Counted from the first letter of the stretch, positions 1,498-59,200 are shown. The stretch is 64,000 nt of DNA from Octopus bimaculoides (GCF_001194135.2 NC_068981.1:130001172-130065171); one strand, 5' to 3'. Numbers and translations: made by a program. Notes: generated from the sequence alone by a model not told the origin.

Positions 1498-4176
1498 CTA
1501 GCAGTATAACCTGACGTTGTCCGGGTGTGACTTATTACGCCATCTACGATATAAATCTTGCAGTAGAAAGCCATGCATGAAACCTGCTTGTTGCTGCAGA
1601 CGTCTGTACTGAGAGGATGACATTGCAGAATGTCAATATGGTATCCGTTTTCACCATGAGGAAATAGTAGGGGGTACTGGAGCGCATCGTATGCCCTGTG
1701 AGTTTCTGGAATTCGCCTTATGGCATCATTACAACATGACAGAACGATGTCCCTAGGTTAGACTGGTCACCCTGAAGAATGATAACGATTTCATTACATG
1801 AAGTTTGGTTGTAGCGTCCAAGGTGTTCTCCAGATGGGCGTTTGTCAGCATCAATGACCACTTTAAAATTGGGGCTTGAGGTCATCTCCACGGCATACTT
1901 GAAACTACGCATGTAGCTGTTTGTAGCATGAAGCATCTCTTGCAATTGCAATGTCAGCTCAAAGTCAGTACCTGGTGATATTGTGGTTCATTTTGCGGCT
2001 TGGTTTTGATAGTTGCAAATGAAGTACAGCTGAAGAAACTTTGGCTCTTGGCCTGCGGCTGGCTGAAGAGATCTAATTCTATGGTAAACTTGGCCCTGTA
2101 CTTTAAAAGTGGGCACGAACCCTTCTTGTCTGATGATGTTCACTTCAAATGAGGTCATTTGGAAAGCACAGTTGTACTTCCTTGTCACGAAGAAAACGCC
2201 TTGAGTGTTTGTTCTGGTAAGAAGCAGCTGTAATGGATGAGGGGTGGGTCCAACAAAGAGGGTAGTCTGACCTTTCCACCTGAGCAGCACAATCCAGCTG
2301 GTTCACCGGGTCACTTCCTCGCAGAACAAATTGGACAAACGACTTGCATATAGGAAATCGATAGGTCTGGATGGGAAGCATAGTCGATGTCAGGCTTATA
2401 GTCGAACGCTTTTAATGACTATCGGGAACTGCATGGCCTAGAAACACCTCGATGACAATTTCTACAAATTGAGACATTGGCCAGGCGATGAAACCTGACT
2501 TTGGAGCTCTCATTAATTCTGGAGGAAGCAATAGAGGCAGCGTTTTTGTTGAGGCAAATGGCATGTTGTTTAGCATTCTCAGCCGCTCTGCGGGCCGAAG
2601 TGCAAGCAGGGTTATTCATATGATGCAGGTTACGCTGTTGCTCAGACTGAGCAGCTTGCCTTGCGGCTTGTAAAGCAGCACGTCTTGCTCTCCGCATAGC
2701 AGGGTAATCCCTTTTCACAGGAGCTAGGATGGCAATTTCTGATGAAGCAATTGCTGGTGATCTGTTGCTACACAGTTCTGCCAGAATTCTATCAGATTGG
2801 GCAGTAGATGCACCATTTTGCATTATGTTCAAAGTAGCTTCTGGAATGTGGTGAATTGCTGCAGTCTGTTGCTGTCTTTTTAAACCGGTTGCTTTCTTTC
2901 CCCAGCAAACTCTCTTCTTTGGAGGCATAACCTATGTATATATTAAACAGAACAACAAAAAGTTATAACAGATGGCAGGGTAGGTAGTTTTCACATTTTA
3001 ATGAAGTTCACTGATTTGCAATGTGTTGTCCTGTCTACATAAGCTCCGTAGTTTGTATATTTACAAAATATTGACAAACATGTAGTAAGGTAAGATCTAG
3101 TTATATTGTAGTGAATGCTTGTGTGTACGTGCGCGTGTATGCGTTTGAGAGAGCGAGAGAGAAGAGGAAGAGAGAGAGAGGGGGAGAAAGGAATAGAGAA
3201 CGGGAGCGATGAAGAGAGGAAGGGAGAACGGAAGACAGTTATAAAATAGCTATGTGTGCACGCGTTCATATAAGAAACACACACAAACTAAATCGTATAT
3301 CTATAATGTTGATGTGTGTATGTATTCATGTGTATGTTGTTGACACAGATCACGTATGTGTGGTTGTGTGTGTTTTTACGTCTCTATGTTATGAAAAATA
3401 TGTAAAAAATACTAAGAGGAGACAAGGACGCTGAACATGCAGACAGACAATGTAACGAAAACATGAACGAGTGAAACGGGGTATTCCTTATTCAGTCTAG
3501 TTACAAATTATCATTGCAACTTCGGCAAAAGGAAGCTAAGAGCCCCAGATTCCTTGGAAGAAAGAACTGAATGTAAACAGAAAGAAGGACGTATAACAAC
3601 AGAGAACAGATACATACAAAAAGCAGGATATCAACAGCAGGTGTATTTCGACTCCTCACGAAGTAAGTGATGCTGGCTTGTGTAGGAAATGAGAAAGTGA
3701 AGCGAGGAAAAAGAGATGTGCACGGACAAGGTAGAGGGATAGAAGAAAGCTATTAAATGGGAGAGGGGAAGAAGTACGAAGTAAGAGTGAAAAGGTAGAT
3801 AGAAGGAAAGAATAGAAATGGAAGAATAGTCTTAAACCAAGTTTATCTATGACTTCGTATGTATCACTTTCTCTCTCTCTCTCTCCCTCTTTTACTCTTA
3901 CTGTCTATATTATATGTTGAGCGCGTGATCGATGTGTAAGAACGCTGGACAGATAGAATGGAAGAAATATAAAAGTTGCTAGAAACAAAAGCCAAATCTC
4001 CCTTAAATCATACAAAGTAAATGGAATTTAAAAAATCTAATTACTGCACTGGAAAGTTCACATCGAGAAAATTCCATTGATGTAAAAATTTTCACGAAAA
4101 AGTGAAAAATGTGAATTTCTATAAACTTTTAAAAAGGCTACACACAGACACACAACTTCAGCTTTATATATATAGA
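1498..4176 (-). mobile_element. Helitron, internally deleted, both termini present
   Basis: 5' end A|TCTATATATATAAAGCTG (minus, 4176). 3' hairpin CCCGGACAACGTCAGG then CTAG|T (minus, 1498). Frameshifted Rep N-terminal ORFs: YNCAFQMTSF..TFKVQGQVYHRI..KFLQLYF and LQEMLH..NSY..VVIDADKRP..H.GRYN. No helicase region. Confidence 0.88.
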
Positions 4177-4442: not shown

Positions 4443-4786
4443 GGGAGTGGGGAGAGGACTTCGGAAAATTCACAAGATCCGTGTTTTTCCCTCGTAACTT
4501 TGAGGAAAATATAATCCTTTTAGAATCACAAATTAGGATTTTCCTCAGGAACTTGGATGTTAAACATCCCTTTGAAAGGTTCGGGTCCTTACTTCTACTA
4601 TACACACACATATCTATCTACCTATCTATCTATAGTAGAAGGACCCGAACCCTTCAAAGGGATGTTTAGCATCTAAATTCCTGAGGAAAATCCTAATTTG
4701 TGATTTCAAAAGGATTATATTTTCCTCAAAGTTACGAGGGAAAAACTCGGATCTTGTGAATTTTCCTAAGTCCTCTCCTACCCCGT
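4443..4786. repeat. long inverted repeat (fold-back), ~150-bp arms around a microsatellite spacer
   Basis: 4451-4602 is the reverse complement of 4631-4778 with scattered substitutions and small indels. Confidence 0.92.
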
Positions 4787-19851: not shown

Positions 19852-22032
19852 TTAACATCCGCTTTCCATGCTAGCATGGGTTGGACGATTTGACTNNNNN
19901 NNNNNTTGAAACATATGTAGGAATAAAGTATGCAATTATAACATGCATTTTCTCCAATCCTTAAATTCTTAAATATATATGTATATATATATATGTGGAT
20001 ATATGGTAGTAGCCGTTGCAAGATCTGCATCATGGAGAGAACCAAAATTCTTAAGGACTTTAAGAAGCCTGGCGCATTAAACAGCTGTAAAAATGCGTTT
20101 TCTAAATGTATCCACTGCACTACTTACTAGAAAATTGGATCTTCCTGTTTGCTCATTAGGCCTCTCAGAGTCTATAAAGGTTCCCTTCTCTGATTAAGGG
20201 GAAACAACCCGTATTCATTAACGTTGTTCCTATTCCTCAAGTTTTAATAGTTTCCTCACATCCGCAAAAGCAGATATTTTAAAATTTTGTATTCCTATAG
20301 AGTCTCACGAGCTGTCCAGAAGGCTTTAAGTTTGTGTGTGTGAAACCTTGGTTAAGAACTCTATATAAAATTTTGTTGTAATAATTTACTGCTCTGATAT
20401 ATATTTTATTAACTACATACACACACACATATGCACTTACATATTTACATATATATACACACACATACACCATTCATAATTGTGTATATTATTATTTGCA
20501 TGAAAGCATTTTCTATTTACTCTTTTGCAGGCTGTTTAACTTGATAGAATGATTGCACAAGTTGCTCATTGCTATAAGTTTTTCATTGATCAAACGCTAA
20601 AGAGACCTCTATATTTAAGTCATTATCAAAGAACTCTCCTTCTACTCCAACTTCGCCGTTTTAAGCATCTCCAACTTTCCAATCCAGTTTTACCAACATT
20701 TTTTCGGGCAAAGAACTATTTGGAAAGAGTTGCTCTTGTTGACCAGAATGGGCACTTCCGATACAGAGACCTACTCCATTACAGTGCAATTTTATCTAAA
20801 AAAATTAAAAATACAGTTGGCTGCACTCCAAATTCCTGTGAAGGGTTACGGATAGCATTTCTTTGTGAAAATGATTTGTCATATGTCATAACAGAATGAG
20901 CAACTTGGATGATTGGAGCAGCTGCTGTTCCTCTTTGTAAAACATATCCTGTTAAAGAAATTTGTTATTTCATAGACAATTCCAAATCCTCAATTGTTAT
21001 TATTAGTGAAGAATTCAGAAGTCTAACTAAGGAAATAGAACAAAAAACAGGAGTTCAAACATTGCTTTTAAGCAAAGATGACTATCTTCATGACTATGAT
21101 CCATGTCAAAATTATTGGTTGACTAAATGTAAAGAGTTGGACAGAAAATTTGAAGAAATGCTTAAAATAAACCAGTTCAAAAACCAGCCTGCATTAATTA
21201 TTTATACTAGTGGTACAACAGGGAAACCAAAGGTAAGTTTTTAATTCCACCCAATTAATTTTAATGTTTTATTTACTACCTCTCCCTTTCTCTCTCCTAT
21301 ATATATGACCGTTGACTGAACACTATTCATTTTTTTTCTCCGTGTTTTTCTCCTTGTCTCCGTATTCTTTCTGTTGAAGAGCGTAGCTCGAAACGTCAAA
21401 GACTTTCCGTATTCCCGAGCGTCATACTAATATATACTTTTGTTATTTACACCACCTGTCCTCGTCTGNNNNNNNNNNNNNNNNNNNNNNNNNNNNNNNN
21501 NNNNNNNNNNNNNNNNNNNNNNNNNNNNNNNNNNNNNNNNNNNNNNNNNNNNNNNNNNNNNNNNNNNNNNNNNNNNNNNNNNNNNNNNNNNNNNNNNNNN
21601 NNNNNNNNNNNNNNNNNNNNNNNNNNNNNNNNNNNNNNNNNNNNNNNNNNNNNNNNNNNNNNNNNNNNNNNNNNNNNNNNNNNNNNNNNNNNNNNNNNNN
21701 NNNNNNNNNNNNNNNNNNNNNNNNNNNNNNNNNNNNNNNNNNNNNNNNNNNNNNNNNNNNNNNNNNNNNNNNNNNNNNNNNNNNNNNNNNNNNNNNNNNN
21801 NNNNNNNNNNNNNNNNNNNNNNNNNNNNNNNNNNNNNNNNNNNNNNNNNNNNNNNNNNNNNNNNNNNNNNNNNNNNNNNNNNNNNNNNNNNNNNNNNNNN
21901 NNNNNNNNNNNNNNNNNNNNNNNNNNNNNNNNNNNNNNNNNNNNNNNNNNNNNNNNNNNNNNNNNNNNNNNNNNNNNNNNNNNNNNNNNNNNCCATGCTA
22001 GCATGGAAAGCGGACGTTAAACGATGATGATG

Positions 22033-34100: not shown

Positions 34101-37100
34101 TAGTATGAATACAATTTGCATTCAAACTCACTGAAACTATTTTTAAGGTGTCAGATTTAAAGAAGCCTTTATCTTACATATATTTCTATTATTTTTCTAC
34201 CATTTTAACTTAATACTTTGCCATTTTTAAAAGTAAGCTTTCACTATTTTCCAGTGCAAACTGTGGTAATTTTTATGTCTATGATTTAGAGAGAAATCAG
34301 AAGATATTAACAGTAAGTCATTTTGCAAGACTTTACTTCTTCTCTTCCAGTCACTGAGTACAAATGAAAAAGAATCATATGTGCGTGTGTGCATGTGCTT
34401 GTGTGTTTGTGTGTGTGTGTGTGTATGTGTGAAGGTCTGTATATACCTATCTACCCATTTCCCATGGACAAACAAAAGAAAGAAGCACACAACACATTTG
34501 GAAGGAGTGCATATATTAGTAGTCAATAACAATTTGATTTGACTCCATGCAACTTTAAGTATTGTAGGCTCATCACAGAACCTAGCACCTTAGGCCTCAG
34601 GAGCTAGTTTCATGTGATGAACCTACAAAAGTTACATGGAGCCAATTCAAACTATTATTAAATACTAATATATATATGCGCGCACACACACATACACACA
34701 CACATGTGATGGGCTTCTTTCATTTAGTATCTACCAAATCCACTCACAATTATTTGGTTGGCCTGGCACTATAGTAGAAGACGCTTGCACAAGGTGCCAC
34801 ACAGTGGGGCTGAACCTGAAATCATTTGCTTCTTAACAACACAGCCATGCCTTCTTAACCATATAGCCATAACTGCACCCATTTATATTATATATCAGGC
34901 TGAGTAAAAAGTAATCAACGTTTTGAAACATGAAATTCATCACAATATATTTCAACCATGCAGAAATTTTATTCATCAAAGTGAGCACCATTACAATCAA
35001 CACATTTTTGCCAATGAGTTACAAGTTTGTTTATTCCAGTAACATAAAAATCTGGAGTTCTAGAGCTGATGAACTCTTTGAACACACTTTCAGCATCAAT
35101 TTGATTTTTGAACTCCTTCTCTCGCAGGAAACCATCAAGGTGCTTGAAAAGGTGGTAGTCATTACGAGAAAGATCTGGGGAATAAGCTGGGTGGTGAAGA
35201 ACTTCGTGGCCAAGTTCCCTCAACTTCTGGAGTGTCATTAGGGAAACGTGTGGTTGAGCATTGTCATAAAGAATGATTGGCCCTCTTCTGTTGACCAGTC
35301 TGGGATGGAGGAGTAGCAGTTTTTTGTTCATTTTGGCAATTTCACAGCAATATGTTTCTGCAGTAATGGTTTTTCTGGGTTTTAAGAAGTTATTGTGGAT
35401 GAGTCCAGCAGTACACCACCAAACAGTTACCATAACCTTTTTGAAGAGCTCAGGTTTAGGGAAGGATTTTGGTGTTTCATTTTGATCCAGCCACTATGGA
35501 GAGCATTTTTATTATTATACAGAATCCACTTTTCATTGCAAGCTGCAATACGGTCGAGAAATGGATCAGTCTGATTATGGAGAAGAAGCAATGAGCACAT
35601 CCCATATCTGTGCATCTTCTGATTTTCTTTCAAATTGTGTGGTACCCATTTGTCATGCTTTTTTGATTTTCTGATCGCATGCAAATGGTTGCAGGTACTT
35701 TTCTGGCTAACTTGAAGTTCTTTTGCCTGTTCTTGGGTGGTTTTACGTGGATCTTTCTCAATGACAGTCTTTAATTGATCATCATTGATGACGATCTTTA
35801 AGGCTCAGTTCTCCACTACAAAATCGTTTAAGCCATTTTTGAGCTGACCACTCACTGGTCATTTCCTCACCAAATGTTTCACTGATATTGCGAGCAGTTT
35901 CAGCTGCTTTACATCCTTTTTTGAAGTTGAATAGCAAAATTGCTCAGATATCTTACTTTGACAGTTCCATTTTAGGTGATTGTAACAACAGTGGAAAAAA
36001 TATCAGTGTTAATTTATTGATGCATCTGTATTAGACAATTGCAAAAAGTTGTTTAAAAAAATTTCAAACCTCTACAAAAATCCGGTACAAATTCTTCATG
36101 GTTCAAAATGTTGCTTGCTTTTTACTCAACCTCATCATCATTATCATTGTTTAACGTCCGCTTTCCATGCTGGCATGGGTTGGGCGGTTTGACTGAGAGC
36201 TAGCAAGCCAGAAGGCTGCACAGGGTTCCAATCCGATATGGCAATGTTTCTACAGTTAGATGCCCTTTCTAACGCCAACCACTCTGAGAGTGTAGTGGGT
36301 GCTTTTTACATGCCACTGGCACGAGGGTTAGTTAGGTGGTACTGGCATCAGCCATGCTTGATGGTGCTTTTTACATACCACTGGCTCGGGAGCCGGTCAG
36401 GCGGCACTGGCAGTGATCATTCTTGAATGATGCTTTCTACATGCCACTGGCACAGGACCAGTCAGGTGGCACTGGTACCGACCACGCTCAAATGATGCTT
36501 TTTACATGCCACCGGCACAGGTGCCAATCAGGCGGTACTGTCATCAGCCACAACAACGACTTCACTTGCCTCAAAAGGTTTTCACAAATGCAATTTATTG
36601 CCCAATGATTGAAGGATACTCTTAAATGGGCTGGTTATGCTGCACTGGCATACGCCACGTTTACGGTCTCACTTGGCTTGCCAGGTCTTCTCAAGCACAG
36701 CATACCTCCAAAGGTCTCAGTCACTTGTCTTCACCTTGGTGAGGCCCAACGTTTAGAAGTTGTGCTTCACCATCTCATTCCAGGTCTTCCTGGGTCTACC
36801 TCTTCCACATGTTCCCTCTACTGCTAGGGTGTGACACTTTTGCACACAGCTGTCCTTATCCATACGCAGCACATGACCACCAGCACAGTTGTCTCTCTTG
36901 TACACCACATCTGATGCTTCTTATGTCCAATTTTTCTCTCAGGGCGCTTATACTCTGTTGTGTATGCACACTGACATTACACATCCAGCAGAGCATACTA
37001 GCTTCATTCCTTGCAAGCTTATGCATGTCCTCAGCAGTCACAGCCCATGTTTCACTGTCATATAGAATGACTGTTTGCACATGCATCATACAGTCTACCT

Positions 37101-38894
37101 ATTATTTTGAGCGAGAGGTCCTTTGTCACCAGCAGAGGTAGGAGCTCTCTCAACTTTGCCCAGGCTATTCTTATTTTAGCAGTTACACTCTCAGAGCAAC
37201 CACCCCGCTACTGATTTAGTCACTTGTAGTTTTTGGCCCAAGGAATGTGATGGAAGCTGTTTTCTGCACATTTTCAGTGTTTATTGCCCCTGAGCATTTA
37301 CCACACACAAAAACTATCTTCCCAGTTAGCCTTCCTATTATGTGTCCATAGCTTACACCATCTTATGGAGTTTCTACCTACACCTTTACTACAGATCGAG
37401 CAGGGCCATCTGCCTGAAGGGGTTTGTGTCTTGTCTACCTTCCTACTTATTAGGACTTTGGTTTTAGCTAGGTTGACTCTAAGGCCCTTCGATTCTAGTC
37501 CTTGCTTCCACACCTGAAACTTCTCCTCTAGTTCTNNNNNNNNNNGGGCATCCCGTCTTGAATTCCTGTGTTATTGCTTGGAGGACTATGATAAATAGGA
37601 GGGGGCTGAGGACTGAACCTTGGTGGACCCCTACCTTTACCGGAATTCTTCACTGTACTCGTTGCCAACCTTCACCTTACTGACAGCATCTCTGTACATA
37701 GCTTGCACAGCTCTCACTAACCATTCATCTATCCCTAGTTTCCTCATTGACCACCAGATAAGGGATCATGAGATCCTGTCAAAGGCTTTCTCCATGTCAA
37801 CGAAAGCCAGGAACAGAGGTTTATCTTTGGCTAGGTATTTCTCTTGCAGCTGTCTTACCAGAAATATAGCATCAGTGGTGTTTTTCCCTGGAACAAACCC
37901 AAACTGCATCTCGTCTAGATTAACTCCCTCCCTAATTAGTTGGACTATGACCCTCCATGATTTTCATTACCTGATCCAAAAACTTGATACCTCTGTAATT
38001 ATTTGTATCCAATGCATCACCTTTACTTTTGTAGCAGTTGACTATGGTGCTGCTGGACCAGTCATTGGGTATGACTCCTTCGTGTATCACCTGATTGACT
38101 ATACAGGTAACTAGACTATAGCTGACACCACCAGATATTTTAAGCATCTCTGTGGTTATTCCTGATGGGCCGGAGGCTTTCCCTGTCTTCATATCCTTAA
38201 TTGCTTTATCTACCAAGGTATTGTTAATTTGGACAGTTGGTCCCTCCGTTGGGTCGACATTTGGCAGACCCTCTTTCTCCCATTCATTCTCTTCATTTAG
38301 CAACCTTTCACAGCGGTGTCTCCAAGTCTCTCTCCTTGCAGCCTTGTTAAATGCAAGTGAGCTATCATCCATGTGGACACATTTCAAGTCTTTGGTCCTC
38401 ATAATGCAGAACATTGGCAATTTTTTTATCTCCTTCCTCTTTGGCTAAGTAAACCTGTCTCCTAGCTTCCCTTCTGGCAATCTGATACAATTCCCTGCTA
38501 CCATCGTTCTTCCTGTTCTTCCATGCTTGTTTCTTTTCCCTAATGGCCCTGACAACTACATTGTTCTACCACCACATTACCATGGGTCAAGAGTGGACTT
38601 TGCACCATCCACAGATCTGGTTAGTAGCCTTCAACAGGCTGTGCAGAGGGACTGAACCCAAGAGCACATGGTGGGGAACCAAGCTTCTCAACCATACAGT
38701 CATGTCACCACCTATATATATNNNNNNNNNNNNNNNNNNNNNNNNNNNNNNNNNNNNNNNNNNNNNNNNNNNNNNNNNNNNNNNNNNNNNNNNNNNNNNN
38801 NNNNNNNNNNNNNNNNNNNNNNNNNNNNNNNNNNNNNTATATATATAGTTTTAGGGAAAATTTTGGATTTTGTCCCTAATATTATTATTATTAT

Positions 38895-38926
<32 letters not shown>

Positions 38927-41194
38927 TATTCTTTTGTTGGTTTCAGCCACTGAAACCATGACCTTGCTAGAGCACTGCCTTCAAGGGGTTCAGGGGATTA
39001 TATTCATTGGTGTGCTTCACCCAGTACTTGATGACATGACTGTATGGTTGAGAAGTCCCTCTGCACAGCACATTCCGCAAGTGTCTTCTACTATAGCCCT
39101 GGGCCATCCAAAGCTTTGTGAGTGGATTTGGTAGACAGAAACTGAAAAGAGCCTCTCATATAAACCAATGGTTTACAACCAGGTTCTATATGACCCCTGG
39201 GGGTTCACAGTATTATTTTAAGGGTTCATTACAAGAGTCTGCTAGGTTTCTTTCTCTAACATTTTAAATAGTGCAACCTACATAAGTGAATGTGTGATGA
39301 ACAAATTAGGAATTTTGAAAGAAGTATCTATAAAACTCAAATGGCTATGGGGGTCCACCAGTATAAAATAGTAATCAAAGGGGTCCATAGATGAACAATG
39401 GTTGAGAACCACTGTTGTAAACGAACATCATTATTGTTTGTTTCCATTCTTCTGTGAAAAAGATGAGAAAATATTACCTTGCTTGGAAACGGTTGAAGGT
39501 TGGCAACAAGAAGGGTGTCCAGCTGTAGAAAATCTGCCTCAACAAATTTCGCCTGATCCATGCAAACACGGAAAAGCGAACATTAAAACAATGATTATGG
39601 TTATGATTGTGTGTGTGTGTGTGTGTGTGGTATTGTGACCCATTATACAATATTTTTTTAAAATTTCATTTTGAATTTCTCTGGTCCAGTAAACTCAGCA
39701 ATAATGATTGACTAATATATTGTGCTACTGTGAATGAAGTAAGAATGTGCATAAAGTATGTATTATTGGATGCATTGATCAGAGGTATTCCAGCCATGAC
39801 CATCTTGTCTTTTCCCTATGAGCAAAGAACGCAAGACCCATATAATGCAGTATGTCCCTTTCTAAGATAGTGGTATGTTATCTGTGGGACATTTAGCTAC
39901 TACTTCTTGCCGCTAGAGCGTCCATGTAGAGACTTCCTTGGCTCCTGTGGACATGTTTGTGTTATACTTGCGTAAAGCTAAAGTCTGAAGGAGAGGTAGA
40001 AGGAGGGGGGGTTATAAAAGGGAGATCACTCTCTAAAGGGACGTGACTCTATTGAACTTGTTAAAATTAGTATTATATTAACGTATGGGAGTCACTATAA
40101 TTGACTGCCATCTCCTCTATATTTCTGACCTTGTGTCTATGTAAGAAATTATTATTATTTTATTATCGTGCGGGTGACACGTAAAAGCACCCACTACACT
40201 CTCTGAGTGGTTGGCGTTAGGAAGGGCATCCAGCTGTAGAAACTCTGCCAAATCAGACTGGAGCCTGGTGTTGCCATCCGGTTTCACCAGTCCTCAGTCA
40301 AATCGTCCAACCCATGCTAGCATGGAAAGCGGACGTTAAACGATGATGATGATGATGATCCACTGCCCTTTTGGCAAATAAACCATTGGTCAAGTCATTG
40401 AAAGAGATCACTCCACAATCTTCCTTTAGTTAAGATAGTCAAGCAGTGTTCCCTGTTCTGGGGCTTTGGTGAAGGAGGTTCTGTGGTGGATACACATGAA
40501 AGGACTGAAGATGGACTCCTTCCTCTTGACATTTTCATGAACTTTTTCAAGATCAATAAAATAACTAACTGCTTATTGCTAAGGCCTATTAAATCAACTA
40601 TACAGTTGAATCTAAAAAGGGAAGGACACATCAGACAATGTAATTCTAGAGAAGACAAGATTGATGTAGATATGACCTCTTTGATCCTAGCTCTGCTGAG
40701 TCAGGGCTGCCCTGAAGTTACACTACAGCAACAACTACAACTACTTCAAATTGTTGGAGTTGTGCCAATGTTAGAAACCATTGTTGTTGTCAATGTACTT
40801 TTTTGTGATTTATAGATCAAAGCACATGGTGATGATGTTAATGCAGTAAAATTTGCAGATGATAGTTCCCAGATATTGTTCACAGGAGGAGATGATGGAT
40901 TCTGTAAGGTAAGAAATAAAATAAATACATTTAGATTTGTTTATGTTGTGCAGTATATTACTTCTCTAACGTATTGCTACTTCACTGTTCCACATTCTAC
41001 ACTAATGCTCTATATTGTATATTGAATAATCTCATTGTAATGTACTATTTTGTTTTATTATATTTTTCTCAATGATCTGGTCTTCTGTTCAATCCCACTG
41101 CACAACACCTTGGGCAAGTGTTTTCTAATATAGCCCTGAGCCAACCAAAGCCTTGCAAGTGAATTTGGTAAATGGAAACTGAAAGAAACCTATT

Positions 41195-47200: not shown

Positions 47201-48629
47201 ATATATATATATATCATCATCATCATCATCATCATCATCATCGTCATCGTTTAACGTCTGCTTTCCATGCAAGCATGGGTTGGACAGTAAACAAAGTTTG
47301 TTTGTAGAAGCGTTGAGATGTATTGAGAGATACAGGAATAAATTTTTTATTCTCAAACGCATGATAATGCTAATAAAATAGAGCGAACAGGATAAATTAT
47401 CCATACATTGCAGAAAAATACGTTATCAGCCAGCCATGGCTGGCTGGTAACGTATTTTTCTGCAATGTATGGATAATTTATGGCTGGCCAGTAACGTATT
47501 TTTCTGCAATGTATGGATAATTTATCCTGTTCATGCTATTTTATTAGCATCATCATACGTTTGAGAATAAAAAATTTATTTCTGTATCTTTCAATAAAAC
47601 TAATTTTAATATTTTCAGTTTATGATGTTCTTACTGGAGAAATTGTGACCAAACTGTCCAATTGTCACAGCACATGTGTACGAGATGTCTCATGGCATCC
47701 CACGAAAAACACAATAGTAACCACCTCAGTGAGTAAAAATTTATTTCCTTTGCATTTGACTTAAGTGATTTGCTTTCTAGGTGTATGAATTACAGATACC
47801 TTGTCTGCTGTAAGATGATGGTTAAATTTCAATCGACTTGAAACCCAATCCTGTCTTTTGGCAACCATGCTTGGTGTGGTCTTTCACCCAGCTAACTTCA
47901 CTGCAGTTGACAGTTTTGACTACTTTGACAGTCTCTAAGTCAAGTTAGCACCAGAATAATGCTTTGTCATGTCAACCCTTTTGATACCAACCTGCCCAAA
48001 ACCACTCTTGTTTCTATGATACAAATTGCATTTTAAAGTTATCTAAATTAAAACTTTCCATCAAAATTCCATGTTAATTTATGTTCTAAACACAGCCTTG
48101 ATAATGGCAACATTGTTTTACTAAACACTTCATTATTTTAAAAATTCATTCAAATAAAGGTAATGTATTTTAACAGAAATATGGTAACAAAAGGGTTAAA
48201 CCCTATTTCCATTATTTTAATATTAAGTAATTTTTCATAACACCCTATTTCTTGAAAGTCTTTCTTTCTCCCTCCCTCTTACAAAAATAAAAGATGGAAA
48301 GGAAAAAGGTTGCCAGTGGAGTTGAGAAATAGAAAGGAGGAAAATTGTAGTACAACCTGTGGCAACTTATATTTCAGATATTTCTTTGAAATAAATCATT
48401 AAATCCAAATGCAAATTCTTTTTTTATTGATGAAAAAATGTAATGCATATATGTTTTTGGATATGTCTCAAGTATATAGTTGATTTACTAAAACTTGAAA
48501 AATCTTTGTTCTATCTTGTAGTGGGACTCAACAATATGCCAGTGGTATTACTATGGCATTGAACAGCATCGAGATTTTGAAAATGGAGAATTATATTACC
48601 TCAAATCATTTCGACGATTATTTGATTGA
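6225..48629 (+). CDS. DCAF11: DDB1- and CUL4-associated factor 11 (WDR23), complete multi-exon CDS, 497 aa
   Basis: join(6225-6319,8161-8228,10143-10171,19652-19747,23837-23901,25373-25473,27916-28018,30076-30119,32532-32655,34255-34312,40816-40908,43286-43378,44477-44566,46291-46354,46440-46592,47619-47728,48522-48629) = 1494 nt, all GT-AG, phases chain without a break. Hallmark motifs: KAFCGIYSK, PDGNYVIYSSWSD, HGDDVNAVKFAD, VWDRRTL, RYLISNSKDQTIKLWDIRKF, WDYRW, MTYRGHTVLHTLIRCKFSP, CVRDVSWHP. Exons 1-3 are the least certain. Confidence 0.93.
8161..8228 (+). CDS. DCAF11: DCAF11 exon 2 (RGRRHRAVRHSSRREKKEVDEPK)
   Basis: ttcattgtag acceptor, gtaatt donor, phase 2 to 1, open; called on phase fit rather than strong homology. 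Confidence 0.55.
10143..10171 (+). CDS. DCAF11: DCAF11 exon 3, 29-nt micro-exon (ADQAPKSTVH)
   Basis: ttctattctag acceptor, gtaagc donor, phase 1 to 0; aligns with vertebrate VDATPDTREL. Confidence 0.65.
12080..12460 (+). mobile_element. tRNA-headed SINE with internal (TA/TG) microsatellite; related copies or fragments at 200-445, 14880-15230, 38930-39150, 43990-44385
   Basis: shared blocks 'tatagcctcgggccaaccaaagccttgtgagtggatt', 'ggtgtgtttacatcccc', 'actgaaacaagtaaaaga'. Confidence 0.75.
16203..16720 (-). mobile_element. mariner transposase fragment (C-terminal half plus one TIR)
   Basis: LHLPYSLDLAPMDCHLF (YSPDLAP motif) on minus; TIR-like TACAAGGTGGTATCAAAAAGTTCC. Confidence 0.75.
18571..18952 (-). 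mobile_element. full-length tRNA-derived SINE with 12-bp target-site duplication
   Basis: Pol III A box TGGCCCAGTGG and B box GTTTCGATTCC on minus; direct repeat GACTTCACAAGT at 18559-18570 and 18953-18964. Confidence 0.88.
19100..19390 (+). mobile_element. older copy of the same SINE family, opposite orientation
   Basis: tRNA-like head plus shared core 'gtgctc.gccacttgcac.ttaatttcatgagcaggctgttcc.ttgat'. Confidence 0.8.
19402..19466. repeat. (CA)n microsatellite; other SSRs include (TA)n 10231-10270 and 16139-16185, (CA)n 22037-22085, (CAT)n at many retroposon tails
   Basis: directly visible. Confidence 0.97.
19652..19747 (+). CDS. DCAF11: DCAF11 exon 4 (DTHLGQQILLASGR...SHMLQK)
   Basis: ctattgcag / gtaaat, phase 0 to 0; resembles TQVELATG...RMLHQ. 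Confidence 0.8.
20005..20215 (+). mobile_element. probable Penelope-like element 3' fragment (GIY-YIG C-terminal tail)
   Basis: GSSRCKICIMERTKILKDFKKPGALNSCKNAFSKCIH resembles the recalled PLE tail RCxLCxxEK..I...LNxRxE..SKCRH; followed by a decayed hammerhead-like CTGATTA-AGGGG..CCCG. Confidence 0.45.
20549..21232 (+). pseudogene. ACSF3: ACSF3 (mitochondrial malonyl-CoA synthetase) first coding exon, 228 codons, one in-frame TGA at a conserved Trp; nested in DCAF11 intron 4 (pseudo-exon or editing-rescued exon)
   Basis: ORFs 20549-20899 and 20909-21244 are in the same frame. RVALVDQNGHFRYRDL, RIAFLCENDLSYVITE*ATWMIGAAAVPL and ALIIYTSGTTGKPK (AMP-binding P-loop) match ACSF3. Acceptor ttttgcag at 20530, donor AAG|gtaagt at 21233. 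No later ACSF3 exon was seen in the readable sequence. Confidence 0.88.
21300..21468 (+). mobile_element. Penelope-like pseudo-LTR / non-autonomous repeat carrying the hammerhead, truncated by a gap
   Basis: hosts the hammerhead motif; a related inverted copy lies at 26130-26218. Confidence 0.55.
21366..21402 (+). ncRNA. minimal type I hammerhead ribozyme motif (Penelope-type) with A6U core variant
   Basis: stem I UCUUU/AAAGA; core CUGUUGA; stem II GAGC-GUA-GCUC; GAAA; palindromic ACGU stem III; GUC triplet ending at 21397. Confidence 0.7.
23443..23672. mobile_element. TTAA-flanked MITE (piggyBac-like); family copies at 28373-28600, 43555-43776, 50386-50605
   Basis: TTAA-CCCTTTAGCATTCA ... 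TGAATGCTAAAGGG-TTAA termini, shared ~220-bp body. Confidence 0.85.
23837..23901 (+). CDS. DCAF11: DCAF11 exon 5 (REVGMGDKQCFSNGDQCAIGT)
   Basis: tttcag / gtaagt; resembles RERGLCHRGSFSLGEQSRV. Confidence 0.85.
25373..25473 (+). CDS. DCAF11: DCAF11 exon 6 (YIPN...KAFCGIYSKEGDSFLAAGR)
   Basis: tctttag / gtaggt; KAFCGIYSK motif. Confidence 0.92.
25880..26105 (-). mobile_element. young RTE-LINE 3' tail / derived SINE ending in (CAT)n; near-identical copy at 40170-40358, many older copies
   Basis: 'gttggcgttaggaagggcatccagctgtagaaac...ccatgctagcatggaaagc.gacgttaaacg.tgatgatg' recurs throughout the window and matches the tail of the LINE at 36133. Confidence 0.8.
27916..28018 (+). CDS. DCAF11: DCAF11 exon 7 (DVYIRLYDT...WSILDAAFS)
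   Basis: cttcag / gtaagt; IRLYD and WSILD motifs. Confidence 0.92.
30076..30119 (+). CDS. DCAF11: DCAF11 exon 8 (PDGNYVIYSSWSDC)
   Basis: gtttag / gtaagt; YSSWSD motif. Confidence 0.93.
30180..30370 (+). mobile_element. short tRNA-related SINE; copies at 9470-9630, 15680-15860, 22950-23105, 56290-56500
   Basis: shared 'ctttgcctttcatcc..ggggt.ga..aa.taagtaccag...cactggggtcgatgtaatc' block. Confidence 0.7.
32532..32655 (+). CDS. DCAF11: DCAF11 exon 9 (IHLCNIRG...FSSDNKEILGG)
   Basis: tttcag / gtaagc; matches IHICNIYGE...SSDGREVLGG. Confidence 0.93.
34255..34312 (+). CDS. DCAF11: DCAF11 exon 10 (ANCGNFYVYDLERNQKILT)
   Basis: ttttccag / gtaagt; matches ANDGCLYVFDREQNRRTL. Confidence 0.9.
34893..36133 (-). 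mobile_element. near full-length decayed mariner (SETMAR/Hsmar1-like transposase)
   Basis: WVPHNL, DEKWILY-like, MVTVWWC, DNAQPH and HPAYSPDLS.NDYHLF motifs in frameshifted ORFs; TIRs TCAGGCTGAGTAAAAA / TTTTTACTCAACCT about 1.24 kb apart. Confidence 0.93.
36133..38520 (-). mobile_element. 5'-truncated RTE-clade LINE (RT plus 3' UTR with tandem repeats and (CAT)n tail)
   Basis: ORFs with KAIKDMKTGKASGPSGITTEMLK, YKSKGDALDTNNYRGI, WKQGLESKGLRVNLAKTK and ILYDSETWAVT; frameshifts and stops. Confidence 0.92.
40816..40908 (+). CDS. DCAF11: DCAF11 exon 11 (IKAHGDDVNAVKFADDSSQILFTGGDDGFCK)
   Basis: ttatag / gtaaga; WD repeat. Confidence 0.95.
43286..43378 (+). CDS. DCAF11: DCAF11 exon 12 (VWDRRTLNENNPTPVGVFSGHAGGITYIDSR)
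   Basis: tttcag / gtaatg; WD repeat. Confidence 0.95.
44477..44566 (+). CDS. DCAF11: DCAF11 exon 13 (GDSRYLISNSKDQTIKLWDIRKFSTEEGIK)
   Basis: ttttag / gtaatt; near-identical to vertebrate motif. Confidence 0.96.
45412..45728 (+). mobile_element. probable solo LTR
   Basis: TGTAAC...TTACA inverted termini, TATATAAA near 45508, AATAAA near 45706; no clean TSD. Confidence 0.55.
46291..46354 (+). CDS. DCAF11: DCAF11 exon 14 (ATEAAISFQRWDYRWRPISQE)
   Basis: ttttcag / gtaagt; WDYRW motif. Confidence 0.93.
46440..46592 (+). CDS. DCAF11: DCAF11 exon 15 (GDVSVMTYRGHTVLHTLIRCKFSP...YIYSGCATG)
   Basis: gtttcag / gtaagt; preceded by a short 85-nt intron. Confidence 0.96.
47321..47596. repeat. palindromic fold-back element with an internal direct duplication
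   Basis: arms TATTGAGAGATACAGGAATAAATT... / ...AATTTATTTCTGTATCTTTCAATA, centre CAGCCATGGCTG at ~47436; 'taacgtatttttctgcaatgtatggataattta' occurs twice on the right arm. Confidence 0.92.
47619..47728 (+). CDS. DCAF11: DCAF11 exon 16 (YDVLTGEIV...CVRDVSWHPTKNTIVTTS)
   Basis: ttttcag / gtgagt. Confidence 0.95.
47972..48199. mobile_element. second piggyBac-like MITE family
   Basis: CCCTTTTGATACCA ... TGGTAACAAAAGGG-TTAA termini. Confidence 0.65.
48522..48629 (+). CDS. DCAF11: DCAF11 exon 17, terminal (WDSTICQW...RRLFD*)
   Basis: cttgtag acceptor; begins WD as in vertebrate S|WDGNLRLW; TGA at 48627-48629. Confidence 0.88.
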   Translation, partial: WDSTICQWYYYGIEQHRDFENGELYYLKSFRRLFD

Positions 48630-55817: not shown

Positions 55818-56230
55818 TCAAACACCAACTTCTTGCTTAAAATGAGAAGGAGTCTGATTATGATTGGTCAAGTTCCCTAATTTGAACTGAGACTCAACTT
55901 GCATACTGGAAGGTGTCAGTGAAGTATCATGAGGATCCGTGAGTGTTTGATGAGGATGCTGGTCGTGTATATTAACTGTGATTGAACAGTCATTAGACAG
56001 AGGACTACTGCAGGTCAGAGGTGACTGGCTAAAAGGGGAAGTGTCAAGTGAATTGCTGCTGCCAACTGTGTCTTGAAGAATTATTTGGGAATCACCATTC
56101 TGACCATTAATAATGTTCTCCACAGCTTGATTTCCAAGCTGGTCAGGAAAACTGGGATTTGATAATAAATGAGGTTGAAGACTAACTGCTGAAACCGCTG
56201 CTGAGGAATGTCCAATTTCACTATTTGCTC
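55818..56230 (-). CDS. HNF4: HNF4 terminal exon, Ser/Pro/Gln/Thr-rich F domain ending FKQEVGV*
   Basis: catttccag acceptor, phase fits the previous exon, ORF open to stop; KQEV resembles the vertebrate HNF4A C-terminus. Confidence 0.8.
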
Positions 56231-59200
56231 CTGGAAATGATAATAATAATAATAAATAATAATGATAATAACAAACATTAACAATAATAATCCTTTCTAC
56301 TATAAGCACAAGGCCTGAAGTTTAGTGGGAGGGGGGCTAATTGATTACATTGACCCCAGTGTTTAAATGGTACATATTTCATCGATCCCGAAAGGATGAA
56401 AGGCAAAGTCAACCCCGGCAGAATTTGAACACAAACTGTAAAGACAGACAAAATGCTGCTAAGCATTTTGCCTGGCATGCTAATGATTCTGCCAGCTCGC
56501 CAGTTTAATAATAATAATAAATAAATACACAACAAGTTAAAATTATGGCATACTAACAGTTACCTACAGCATAACTAGCAGACTGATATGATATCACTGT
56601 AATGGCTAGACTATCAGATGTTGCTATACATCGCTGGTCACAATGCACTTCCTTGTATTGTTATAACTTTCAAATGATGCTACCCCTATAGCTAGGTGGA
56701 CAGGCCAACATTATCTCTGAATGTCGCACAAGTTACTCGCTGGGTTATCCATTTACAGCTTAGTGGACTGAAGCAATGTAAAATGAAGTGTTTCATTCAA
56801 GAACACAATGCACAACCATTCTGAGAATCAAAACTACAATCTTGTAATCATGAGGACAGCACCCCGACCACTAGGCCATGTACTTGTATATATAAGCTAG
56901 GAAATATTTTCCCTTTTCTTCAGACCAGACATGTTTTCTTGGAAGATTGCAAACAAAATGTCATCACTTGTGTACAACAGTGACACTTGTTTACAATTAG
57001 TATACAATGTCAAAACAACACCCACACGTGACAGGCTTCTTTTTAGTTTCAACCTATTAAATTTGCTGTCAAGTTTTTGGTCGGCCCTTTATGCATGTGT
57101 ATGTGTCGGCTTTGAATTTGCATTGACTACAATGCCCTGTGTTCTGACTCTCTGTTCTGAATTTAGATCCTGTGGAGACCAGCCTTGTCTTTATTACTTT
57201 CAGAGTTGATTAAAAAGACTACTAATCCAGGGTCAGGATATGACAGAGATGTTGCAATGAAATATGACAGAGAGGTGCAGTATTGAGATATGGTAGCAAG
57301 CTGTTTGAGTGAGGCAATGAGATATCATTGGGACACAGTAGTGAGATATAATAAAGAGATGACAGATAGAACAGAGAACTAAAAAACAAGATGTAAAGCG
57401 ATGTAGTAAGTAAATATGAGAAACAACCATTGTATAATGTTCCTGAGCAAAATGTCACACTATACTTGCTCCAGTTTGCCTGACTGATCAGTTCAGGCTC
57501 TACTACACAATGGTTGAATAGTAAGTGGACAGTAGCATAGTTAGTTGGGGTGCAAGGAGTAGCAGTTTGCTCAGGTGATGCTCTTATGGGGGGAAACATC
57601 TTTAGGTCTCCTGTATAACTGTACAGGCTTGGGGTTTGGTTTGGGCGGTGGGGAAAAAACTTAAGGGTTGTTCCGAGTGACACACTCTTTAGCTATTCCA
57701 CTGTAAATAATTTTCATACAAAAATATTCCACTCACAACTTGAGAAGACCCATGAAACCAAGAAAAATTGTAGTCGTGGCCAATGCTGGTGTCACATAAC
57801 TGGCACCTGTGCTGGTGACATGTAAAAAGCACCCTTTGAATGTTGGATCTCACAGAGGCAATGATAAGTGACTGAAACCTTTGGCGATATGCTGTGCTTG
57901 AGAAGACCCATCAAACCAAGTGAAATCATAGTTATGGCCGATGCTGGCATCTGTGCTGGTGGCATGTAAAAAGCACCCATTACACTCTTGGAGTGGTTGA
58001 CATTAGGAAGGGCATCCAGCCATAGACACCATACCAAATCAGATTGGAACCTAGTGCAGCCTTCCAGCTTATCAGTTTCAGTCAAACCGTCTAACCCATG
58101 CCAGCATGGAAAGCAGACACTAAATGATTATGATGATGATGAACAGCAGAGGAAAGTTTTTTTTTTTTTGTTGCTTACCTCCAAGTAACATTTCTTGAAG
58201 AAGATTGTCTATTTTAGCTACCCCAAATATTTTGGCCATCTGAATCTGTTCTATCATCTGCCAAGTTATGCTCTGTAAGACAGGTAAAATAAGCAAAATT
58301 TCTCCAAATCGACCACGGCATTCATATTGTCTGTCATTGATATAATCTTCAAGATTCACTTGAGCTTGGCATCGATACGTTTTTATTCGGTGGCTGTCAA
58401 TTAAACCTCTGGCACCTAACAAAGAAAATTAAACATTGGTTTGGTTATTGGAGACAGATAAATGATTAAGGTTTCAAATTTCGGAATTTATCCAAACAAG
58501 TGTAAATACACATTTATACATATATACAATGATTTCATAGACAGAAAGTAAAAGAAGCCTGTCGTGTGTGTGTAGCATGGGTTAGACAGTTTGGCTGGAA
58601 CTGGTAAGCCAGAGAGCTGCACCAGACTCCAGTCTGTTTTGGCTTGGTTTCTACAGCTGGATGCCATTCCTAACACCAACCACTTTACAGAGTGTATTGG
58701 GTGCCTTTCACATGTCACCAGCACTAGTCACAACCATGATTTCACTTAGCTATATATATATATATATATATATCAGGTTTTCCCATAAGTTCTTTCTGAA
58801 TTTTGAATAAAGAAAGCAAGTGATCAAATGTCATATTTAATTGAAATTTAATTACCAATGTACTTTCCCTGATTATCTATGACTTCCTTCCATCTATTTA
58901 CAAGCTTTTTAATCCCATCAATGTAAAACTCTTTTGGTTTCAAAGCGAAGAACTCTTAAGTGTCAGTTTCGACCACCTCCTGGCTTACGAAAGTTATGTC
59001 CCCCAAATGATTCTGTAAACTATGAAACAAATGGTAGTCTGAAGGAACAAGGTCAGGAGAATAAGGTGGACGAGGAATTTTTTCCTAACCAAGCTTTCGA
59101 TCTTCTGTGATGTGATCTTTGCAGTTGGGGGTTGCGCATTGTCCTGATGAAACATCACTCCTTTTTGATTCACTAAAGCGAGTCGTTTTTTTCCTCAAAG

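What the first reader, a model, noticed from the sequence alone, without database searches (positions are those of the whole stretch)
20549..21232. ACSF3 exon whose only defect, a UGA at a conserved Trp, lies in a perfect RNA duplex: candidate stop-codon repair by A-to-I editing
Seen: 228 codons of ACSF3 with no frameshift and one stop, GAA-TGA-GCA-ACT-TGG (E-*-A-T-W), with TGA at 20897-20899. AATGAGCAACTTG (20895-20907) is the exact reverse complement of CAAGTTGCTCATT (20558-20570) in the same exon. A20899 would pair with U20566, and four more pairs can form past a 2-nt bulge (20888-20892 with 20571-20575, one A-C mismatch). Known: ACSF3 has Trp here (VVAQWASWM); coleoid cephalopods recode mRNA extensively with ADAR; UGI is read as UGG (Trp). 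The upstream arm falls in the poorly constrained targeting-peptide region. Inference: editing could act as an on-switch for a genomically broken metabolic exon. Caveats: ADAR disfavours a 5' G neighbour (the 3' G is favourable), 13 bp is short, and a recent TGG-to-TGA mutation or base-call error plus a chance duplex is possible.
Basis: partly seen in the sequence, partly recalled or inferred. Interest (0 to 1): 0.85.

Follow-up and report, generated by a model that had tools for sequence, protein, structure and literature searches.

The report
Stop codon in ACSF3 exon, unproven repair
The first coding exon of a malonyl-CoA synthetase (ACSF3-like) gene really does carry a single TGA in place of a conserved tryptophan, and that TGA lies inside a perfect 13-base inverted repeat, but nothing available here shows RNA editing, so it is most likely a young nonsense variant or base error with a coincidental repeat.

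Summary
The exon is 20531-21232, with ATG at 20549 and one in-frame TGA at 20897-20899. There is an exact 13-nt inverted repeat, 20558-20570 / 20895-20907. The stop replaces a Trp kept in 11 of 13 homologues.

The repeat is the only one of its length in the exon. In shuffles, a repeat this long covers a fixed base with probability about 4e-4. The helix is predicted at probability 0.87-0.95 when the exon is folded alone, but at 0.02-0.7 with intron flanks.

The only close relative found (five genomic contigs, about 94% identical) has TGG. It differs at 4-5 arm positions, and the helix has probability 0 there. The exon shows purifying selection (dN/dS 0.39) and no extra decay in the window lineage, so the stop is young.

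The A has the disfavoured 5' G and is A-U paired, and 13 bp is short for ADAR. No DNA or RNA reads, no second assembly and no published editing table could be reached, and the organism could not be identified.

Best reading (about 0.55): a recent nonsense allele or base error plus a chance near-complement. Editing repair about 0.15. Templated (template-switch) origin about 0.08. Cheap read pile-ups would decide.

The parts
20531..21232 (+). First coding exon of an ACSF3-like (malonyl-CoA synthetase, AMP-binding superfamily) gene: 18 nt of 5' UTR plus 228 codons
   Evidence: Acceptor cag|G and donor AAG|gtaagt read; translation; both junctions conserved in the relative's contigs. Named homologues are ACSF3 / malonyl-CoA synthetase. 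The post-stop half scores 58 bits on PF00501, cutoff 29.9.
20549..20551 (+). Start codon, preceded by an in-frame TAA at 20537-20539
   Evidence: The same ATG was called as the gene start in L001-L005.
20897..20899 (+). In-frame TGA at codon 117, where homologues have Trp (TGG in the close relative and in two outgroups)
20558..20570 (+). Upstream arm CAAGTTGCTCATT (codons 4-8 of the presumed targeting peptide)
   Evidence: It differs from the relative at 20561, 20562 and at 20568, which is polymorphic in the relative.
20895..20907 (+). Downstream arm AATGAGCAACTTG, containing the stop codon
   Evidence: It differs from the relative at 20899 (A vs G) and 20905 (T vs C).
20571..20575 (+). Weak inner extension pairing with 20888-20892 past a 2-nt bulge (4 pairs, 1 A-C mismatch)
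   Evidence: In the relative, 20574 and 20888 are G, giving G.U instead of A-U.
20551..20555 (+). Weak outer extension (5 pairs, four of them G.U) with 20910-20914 across a 2x2 internal loop, seen in the MFE of the 400-nt fold
21203..21232 (+). YTSGTTGKPK adenylate-forming signature motif at the exon end, intact
   Evidence: invariant columns Y219-K228.

Best explanation
This is the first coding exon of an ACSF3-like malonyl-CoA synthetase gene. In this assembly it carries a young G-to-A transition in the third base of the Trp117 codon (TGG to TGA). As written in the DNA, the allele is a null: a 116-residue product, and a premature stop upstream of an exon junction that should trigger nonsense-mediated decay. 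The last two points are inferred from established knowledge. The rest of the exon is under purifying selection and shows no extra decay in this lineage. So the change is most likely a private or polymorphic nonsense allele of the sequenced animal, or a base error, rather than an old pseudogene. The 13-bp complementarity is real and specific to this species. The mutation that made the stop also turned a G.U (G-T in DNA) position into A-U, and so completed the 'perfect' repeat. I read the repeat as a near-complement that arose by chance, not as an evolved ADAR substrate. Shown: sequence, frame, repeat, conservation of Trp, absence of the helix in the relative, selection statistics. Inferred: that the allele is young, that it is not rescued, and that the repeat has no function.
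For: There is a single stop and no frameshift in 228 codons. The close relative has TGG in five independent contigs, and two distant outgroups have TGG. dN/dS between window and relative is 0.39 overall and 0.37 in the mature domain. Of 22 amino-acid differences, the window agrees with the outgroups at 11 and the relative at 8, so the window lineage is not decaying faster. The helix has probability 0 in the relative's exon, and the arms carry 4 fixed differences in 26 nt plus a segregating polymorphism in the relative. That means the arms are not conserved. The helix probability falls from 0.87-0.95 (exon alone) to 0.02-0.7 when intron flanks are included. The exon as a whole is not more structured than shuffles, z = +1.3 and +0.4. 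Two of the other 53 sampled positions in the exon can form 51-nt duplexes at least as strong, so the stop ranks 3rd of 54. The target A has a 5' G and is A-U paired, not A-C (sequence). ADAR's dislike of a 5' G is established knowledge.
Against: A perfect repeat of 13 nt or more covering one fixed base of the exon is expected in only 0.04% of shuffles, so pure coincidence requires that many disrupted exons were screened. No reads or second assembly could be examined, so neither heterozygosity nor base error is shown. Three window-specific G-to-A differences in or next to the helix (20574 Cys->Tyr, 20888 Val->Ile, 20899 Trp->stop) would each be restored by A-to-I editing. This is the pattern the harm-permitting model predicts.
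Confidence: 0.55

Rival explanations
1. ADAR repair. The 13-bp exonic helix, with weak extensions to about 20 bp, recruits ADAR. A20899 becomes inosine, UGI is read as Trp, and full-length enzyme is made. The G-to-A change could be fixed because editing masks it (harm-permitting), or because editing gives conditional control.
For: The helix is in the centroid of the whole-exon fold and in the MFE of the 400-nt fold, at probability 0.87-0.95. The coincidence of repeat and stop is about 4e-4 by shuffling. The exon is otherwise intact and constrained. Two further window-specific G-to-A changes lie at helix-extension positions and would be 'restored' by editing. There is precedent: coleoid transcriptome work joins ORFs across 'editable stop codons' (PMC8382921), there is the harm-permitting model (PMC6881472), and fungal editing repairs premature stops (PMC10776026).
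Against: The 5' neighbour is G, the least favoured, and the precedent in PMC8382921 is UAG, not UGA. The pair is A-U rather than A-C. The duplex is only 13 perfect bp, and the extensions are mostly G.U. The helix is lost with intron flanks at 37 C and is absent in the relative. A mitochondrial housekeeping enzyme would need editing outside the nervous system, where coleoid editing is low (established knowledge). The organism was not verified as a coleoid. There is no RNA evidence.
Confidence: 0.15
2. Templated mutation. A replication template switch between the two imperfect arms (quasi-palindrome correction) copied the upstream arm into the downstream arm. That wrote A at 20899 and T at 20905 in one event, so the repeat caused the stop. 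The result is still a null allele.
For: The derived sequence has a perfect repeat where the relative has an imperfect one. Both downstream differences (20899, 20905) are exactly what copying the upstream arm would give. The upstream difference is an adjacent dinucleotide change AC->GT. This is the signature used to detect such events in coding DNA (PMC8604942; PMC5453318 and PMC8794818).
Against: The spacer is 324 nt, whereas template switching favours short spacers (PMC8604942). Polarity of 20561/62 and 20905 cannot be set with the distant outgroups. Differences are not significantly clustered, p = 0.35-0.64. The fact that all differences 'improve' pairing in the window is an ascertainment effect of starting from a perfect repeat.
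Confidence: 0.08
3. Fixed loss or redundant copy. The TGA is fixed and the gene is a very recent unitary pseudogene, or this is one of two ACSF3 copies and the other is intact.
For: A stop at a conserved Trp in the first coding exon is a classic disabling lesion. No other ACSF3 exon was found in the remaining 43 kb downstream, so integrity of the rest of the gene is unknown.
Against: There is no second lesion in 228 codons. dN/dS is 0.39 and there is no excess of derived changes in this lineage. Loss would therefore have to be very recent.
Confidence: 0.12
4. Translational read-through. UGA is decoded at low frequency by near-cognate tRNA-Trp, giving some wild-type protein without editing.
For: UGA is the leakiest stop, and Trp is one of the residues inserted at UGA (established knowledge). 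The stop sits in a predicted helix.
Against: The base after the stop is G, not the read-through-prone C, and no known read-through motif or downstream pseudoknot was seen. No Rfam family was matched in the window. Yields are typically below a few percent, and nonsense-mediated decay would still act.
Confidence: 0.03

Closest known systems
'Editable stop codons' (stop-loss, STOP->Trp A-to-I events) in coleoid cephalopod transcriptomes (Shoshan et al. 2021, PMC8382921)
   Same: An internal stop between two ORF halves at a position translated as Trp after editing; an exonic setting.
   Different: Those are UAG->UGG (A with 5' U and 3' G, the ideal ADAR context) and were defined from RNA evidence. 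Here the codon is UGA (5' G) and no RNA evidence exists.
Restorative editing of premature stop codons in fungal 'pseudogenes' (PUK1 and about 70 genes in Fusarium graminearum; PMC4817773, PMC10776026)
   Same: A genomically broken ORF restored to the ancestral Trp by A-to-I editing; an on-switch logic.
   Different: The fungal enzyme is ADAT/TadA-derived and prefers UAG in hairpin loops. It does not act on long-range dsRNA, it is specific to the sexual stage, and it is not found in animals.
Harm-permitting model of coleoid recoding (Jiang and Zhang 2019, PMC6881472)
   Same: G-to-A substitutions at conserved sites become tolerable where editing restores G. The window has G-to-A at Cys9, Val114 and Trp117 in or beside the helix.
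   Different: The model was shown statistically for missense sites. A nonsense case would need high editing in every tissue that needs the enzyme. Not tested here.
Amber/W site of hepatitis delta virus RNA (ADAR1 editing of a stop to Trp)
   Same: A stop-to-Trp switch by ADAR in a base-paired context.
   Different: That case is UAG, lies in a long rod-like genome structure, and lengthens a protein rather than repairing a gene.
Template-switch / quasi-palindrome mutations that homogenise inverted-repeat arms (PMC5453318, PMC8794818, PMC8604942)
   Same: The repeat is perfect in one lineage and imperfect in the sister lineage, and the changes match the reverse complement of the other arm, including a dinucleotide change.
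   Different: The 324-nt spacer is far longer than typical, and polarity is unresolved.

Membership tests
ACSF3 / malonyl-CoA synthetase (AMP-binding superfamily) | AMP-binding (PF00501) domain | tested here: met
   The post-stop half 20900-21232 scores 58.1 bits, cutoff 29.9. The relative's intact exon product carries PF00501.
ACSF3 / malonyl-CoA synthetase (AMP-binding superfamily) | Adenylate-forming signature motif (Y)TSGTTGxPK | tested here: met
   YTSGTTGKPK at codons 219-228, invariant across 13 homologues.
ACSF3 / malonyl-CoA synthetase (AMP-binding superfamily) | Closest named relatives are ACSF3 / malonyl-CoA synthetases rather than other acyl-CoA ligases | tested here: met
   Named hits are 'malonate--CoA ligase ACSF3', 'acsf3' and 'malonyl-CoA/methylmalonyl-CoA synthetase'. 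The NCBIfam bacterial models are not discriminating on this 228-aa fragment.
ACSF3 / malonyl-CoA synthetase (AMP-binding superfamily) | Complete gene with the C-terminal domain exons intact | tested here: inconclusive
   No further ACSF3 exon was detected in the window by tblastn, even at E = 50. They may lie beyond 64000 or in N gaps.
ADAR recoding site | Target adenosine lies in double-stranded RNA | tested here: inconclusive
   The predicted pair A20899-U20566 has probability 0.88-0.95 in the exon alone but 0.02-0.7 with intron flanks. This is in silico only.
ADAR recoding site | Duplex long enough for ADAR (about 20 bp or more, usually imperfect) | tested here: inconclusive
   There are 13 perfect bp, plus 5 mostly G.U pairs across a 2x2 loop and 4 pairs past a bulge. 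This is borderline.
ADAR recoding site | Favourable neighbours (5' U or A, not G; 3' G) and preferably an A-C mismatch | tested here: not met
   The 5' neighbour is G20898, the 3' neighbour is G20900, and the partner is U. The preference rule is established knowledge.
ADAR recoding site | A in genomic DNA, G in cDNA | not testable with these tools
   No reads are available. The window's sub-ORFs are absent from the assembly collection, and no editing table could be reached.
ADAR recoding site | Structure conserved in relatives | tested here: not met
   The relative differs at 20561, 20562, 20899, 20905 (and 20568 is polymorphic). The helix has probability 0 there. The relative has TGG, so it has no site to edit.
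ADAR recoding site | Host is a coleoid cephalopod with high-level recoding | not testable with these tools
   No named cephalopod sequence was returned. Run accessions were not found in papers.
Template-switch (quasi-palindrome) mutation | Perfect repeat in the derived sequence, imperfect in the sister, changes equal to the reverse complement of the other arm | tested here: inconclusive
   The pattern fits, but polarity is unresolved, and the pattern is partly forced by starting from a perfect repeat.
Template-switch (quasi-palindrome) mutation | Short spacer between arms | tested here: not met
   The spacer is 324 nt. Short spacers are favoured according to PMC8604942.
Selenocysteine UGA | Sec/Cys at the homologous position and a SECIS element | tested here: not met
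   Homologues have Trp or Leu, never Cys or Sec. There is no Rfam match in the window, though the 3' UTR is not in the window.

The most novel reading that the evidence does not exclude
An animal nuclear housekeeping gene (ACSF3) is kept in the genome with a premature UGA at a conserved Trp. It is made functional only at the RNA level by ADAR editing, directed by a short exonic helix between the targeting-peptide codons and the Trp region. That would be a nonsense-level case of harm-permitting or conditional editing in a disfavoured GA context.
Probability: 0.15. Interest if true: 0.75.

Novelty: already known. Interest (0 to 1): 0.3.

Why it matters
If the stop proved to be fixed in DNA and edited in RNA, it would be a concrete animal example of a gene that depends on ADAR to be readable at all. 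That would bear directly on the dispute over whether coleoid recoding is adaptive or merely permits otherwise harmful G-to-A substitutions. It would also show efficient natural editing of a 5'-GA site, which is of interest for therapeutic stop-codon correction. If, as is more likely, it is a heterozygous nonsense allele or a base error, it is an ordinary annotation problem. It would then be a useful reminder that a striking short repeat at about 4e-4 is within reach of chance in a genome-wide scan.

Tried and rejected
- **Same-species reads or transcripts.** Exact look-ups of the two sub-ORFs (116 aa and 111 aa) found nothing. The homology search returned no same-species protein.
- **More relatives.** Only one close species was found (two alleles, five runs) and two distant outgroups. 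A degenerate DNA scan of metagenome contigs was empty.
- **Identifying the relative's runs.** Nothing was found in the literature.
- **Published editing tables.** The two Cell papers are not held, and the supplements of PMC8382921 and PMC4384741 have no ACSF3 entry.
- **Identifying the organism.** The mariner fragment gave only non-cephalopod names.
- **Other ACSF3 exons in the window.** None were found.
- **Local mutation cluster around the stop** (5 differences in 25 nt). Not significant by scan statistic, p = 0.35-0.64, so rejected as evidence.
- **A(window)/G(relative) excess** (14 vs 6). Not significant, so not used as evidence.
- **Selenocysteine.** Rejected, because Trp is conserved and there is no SECIS.
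- **Downstream re-initiation at ATG 20909.** Considered, and rejected on inference alone as a route to function, because the product would lack the targeting peptide and about 70 residues of the domain.

Full report
**1. The observation.** The stretch 20300-21500 was read directly.

- An acceptor (ttttgcag|G) places the exon start at 20531. An in-frame TAA at 20537-39 precedes the ATG at 20549. A consensus donor (AAG|gtaagt) ends the exon at 21232.
- Translation gives 228 codons with a single stop...SYVITE*ATWMIG..., with TGA at 20897-20899.
- CAAGTTGCTCATT (20558-20570) is the exact reverse complement of AATGAGCAACTTG (20895-20907). A20899 lies opposite T20566. This is the only inverted repeat of 13 nt or more in the exon.

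**2. What the exon is.**

- The translation finds animal and microbial AMP-binding enzymes. The ones that carry names are 'malonate--CoA ligase ACSF3', 'acsf3' and 'malonyl-CoA/methylmalonyl-CoA synthetase'.
- The half after the stop matches PF00501 at 58 bits, above the cutoff of 29.9.
- The signature YTSGTTGKPK closes the exon and is invariant in 13 homologues.
- The stop column is Trp in 11 of 13 homologues and Leu in two spider sequences.
- No other ACSF3 exon was detected in the window, so the state of the rest of the gene is unknown.
- The organism could not be named. No cephalopod-labelled protein is returned for this exon or for a mariner fragment in the window. The window has the look of a draft animal genome: eight N gaps of 10-945 nt, microsatellites and transposon fragments.

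**3. How unusual is the repeat?**

- In 20,000 dinucleotide-preserving shuffles of the exon, 1.4% contain any perfect inverted repeat of 13 nt or more, and 0.04% contain one covering a fixed base.
- Empirically, 1.5% of the window's bases lie in such repeats with spacing of 700 nt or less. Nearly all of these are transposon-like hairpins and microsatellites. Isolated 13-mers like this one occur about 3-4 times per 64 kb, covering about 0.2% of bases.
- The coincidence with the only stop is therefore uncommon (roughly 4e-4 to 2e-3). It is not beyond what a scan over many disrupted exons would meet.

**4. Does the RNA helix form?**

- Folding the exon alone puts the 13 pairs in the centroid, though not in the MFE, at probability 0.87-0.88 at 37 C and 0.94-0.95 at 18 C.
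- In a 400-nt sub-fold the helix is in the MFE, with a 5-bp outer extension that is mostly G.U.
- With 130-230 nt of intron on each side the probability falls to 0.02-0.08 at 37 C and to 0.02-0.7 at 18 C.
- The exon is not more structured than its shuffles, z = +1.3 and +0.4.
- Duplexes of comparable energy are available to other parts of the exon: the stop-centred segment ranks 3rd of 54.
- Replacing A20899 by G, as a proxy for inosine, lowers the helix probability to 0.51-0.63.

**5. Comparative evidence.**

- One close relative exists in the collection. It is represented by five contigs of about 900-940 nt from runs SRR11869384/85/90/91/94. They include both intron flanks, so they are genomic.
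- They differ from the window at 40 fixed positions of 714 (5.6%), plus two positions that are polymorphic among the relative's contigs (20568 and 20746). All five have TGG.
- Within the arms they differ at 20561-62 (AC vs GT), 20899 (G vs A) and 20905 (C vs T). Position 20568 is polymorphic within the relative (His/Leu). In that species only 8+2 pairs remain, and the helix has probability 0.
- Four fixed differences in 26 arm positions is, if anything, more than expected (p = 0.05). The arms are not conserved.
- All differences 'improve' pairing in the window. That carries no weight, because one starts from a perfect repeat.
- Two distant outgroups (53% and 43% identical) also have TGG, but they cannot polarise the other arm changes.

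**6. Is the gene decaying?**

- dN/dS between window and relative is 0.39: 0.48 in codons 1-45 and 0.37 in the mature domain.
- Of 22 amino-acid differences, the window agrees with the outgroups at 11 and the relative at 8. The window lineage shows no relaxed constraint.
- The five differences within 20881-20905 are not a significant cluster, p = 0.35-0.64.
- The stop is therefore young relative to the species split, or it is masked in some way.

**7. Weighing the mechanisms.**

*Editing repair.* In its favour are the coincidence, the in-silico helix and an otherwise intact gene. So is the fact that three window-specific G-to-A changes in or beside the helix (Cys9->Tyr, Val114->Ile, Trp117->stop) would each be restored by A-to-I. 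That is the pattern of the harm-permitting model (PMC6881472). Stop-to-Trp editing inside coleoid ORFs has been handled explicitly before, but as UAG->UGG (PMC8382921). Repair of premature stops by editing is well documented in fungi (PMC10776026, PMC4817773).

Against it:
- the 5' G neighbour and the A-U rather than A-C pairing (established ADAR preferences);
- the short duplex, and its loss in pre-mRNA context;
- its absence in the relative;
- the need for editing in non-neural tissues for a mitochondrial housekeeping enzyme;
- no RNA evidence, and an unverified host.

I put it at about 0.15.

*Templated origin.* A template switch that copied the upstream arm into the downstream arm would write both A20899 and T20905 at once. 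This matches the published signature (PMC5453318, PMC8794818, PMC8604942). However, the 324-nt spacer is atypical and polarity is unknown. I put it at about 0.08.

*Other rivals.* A fixed recent pseudogene or a redundant copy gets about 0.12, and UGA read-through about 0.03.

*Best reading.* The simplest reading is a recent nonsense allele of the sequenced animal, or a base error, sitting in a near-complement that arose by chance and that the same transition completed. I put it at about 0.55.

**8. Comparison with the known, and verdict.** Both the likely explanation (a nonsense variant in a known gene) and the rival (restorative stop-to-Trp editing) are known kinds of thing. Only the combination of an animal nuclear housekeeping gene, UGA in a GA context and a 13-bp exonic guide would be new. 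The interpretation cannot be decided with these tools, and the indirect evidence leans against it. Interest is moderate to low, and the decisive test (DNA and RNA pile-ups at 20899) is cheap.

Noticed in passing
window 4463-4766; 47337-47580; 38638-39069: Three long near-perfect hairpin-type inverted repeats (arms of tens to about 130 nt, short spacers), typical of MITE-like or foldback transposons. They account for most inverted-repeat coverage in the window.
   Followed up: no
window 34969-35433 (-); also 59576-59725 (-): Fragments of mariner/Tc1-type transposase. The first matches PF01359 and SETMAR-like/mariner proteins of insects and nematodes at 55-65% identity. The second looks like the N-terminal HTH part.
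   Followed up: partly
window 21469-21992 (and seven other N runs): Eight assembly gaps of 10-945 nt; one begins 237 nt after the exon's donor site. This is a scaffold-level draft, so base-level errors near the exon cannot be excluded.
   Followed up: no
L001-L005 position equivalent to window 20568; L004 equivalent to 20746: The relative species is polymorphic inside the upstream arm: CAT/CTT, His7/Leu7, in 3 vs 2 runs. One run also has a private G->A at 20746. This shows the arm is weakly constrained there.
   Followed up: yes
window 20531-21244 vs L001-L005: Among 40 fixed differences, A(window)/G(relative) outnumbers G/A by 14 to 6, while T/C vs C/T is 6 to 4. Ten of the 22 amino-acid differences are of the ADAR-type pairs (K/E, I/V, Y/C, Q/R, S/G, stop/W) with the A in the window. 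This is suggestive of the harm-permitting pattern but not statistically significant.
   Followed up: partly
window 37932-38420 (-), 2419-2928 (-), 55818-56309 (-): Three ORFs of 160-170 aa have no Pfam match. The first reads like the N-terminal part of a non-LTR retrotransposon ORF2; this is an impression only.
   Followed up: partly
window 20420-20470 and 21280-21300; same places in L001-L005: The CA/TA and CT microsatellites flanking the exon are shared with the relative. They are where all five short-read contigs end.
   Followed up: no
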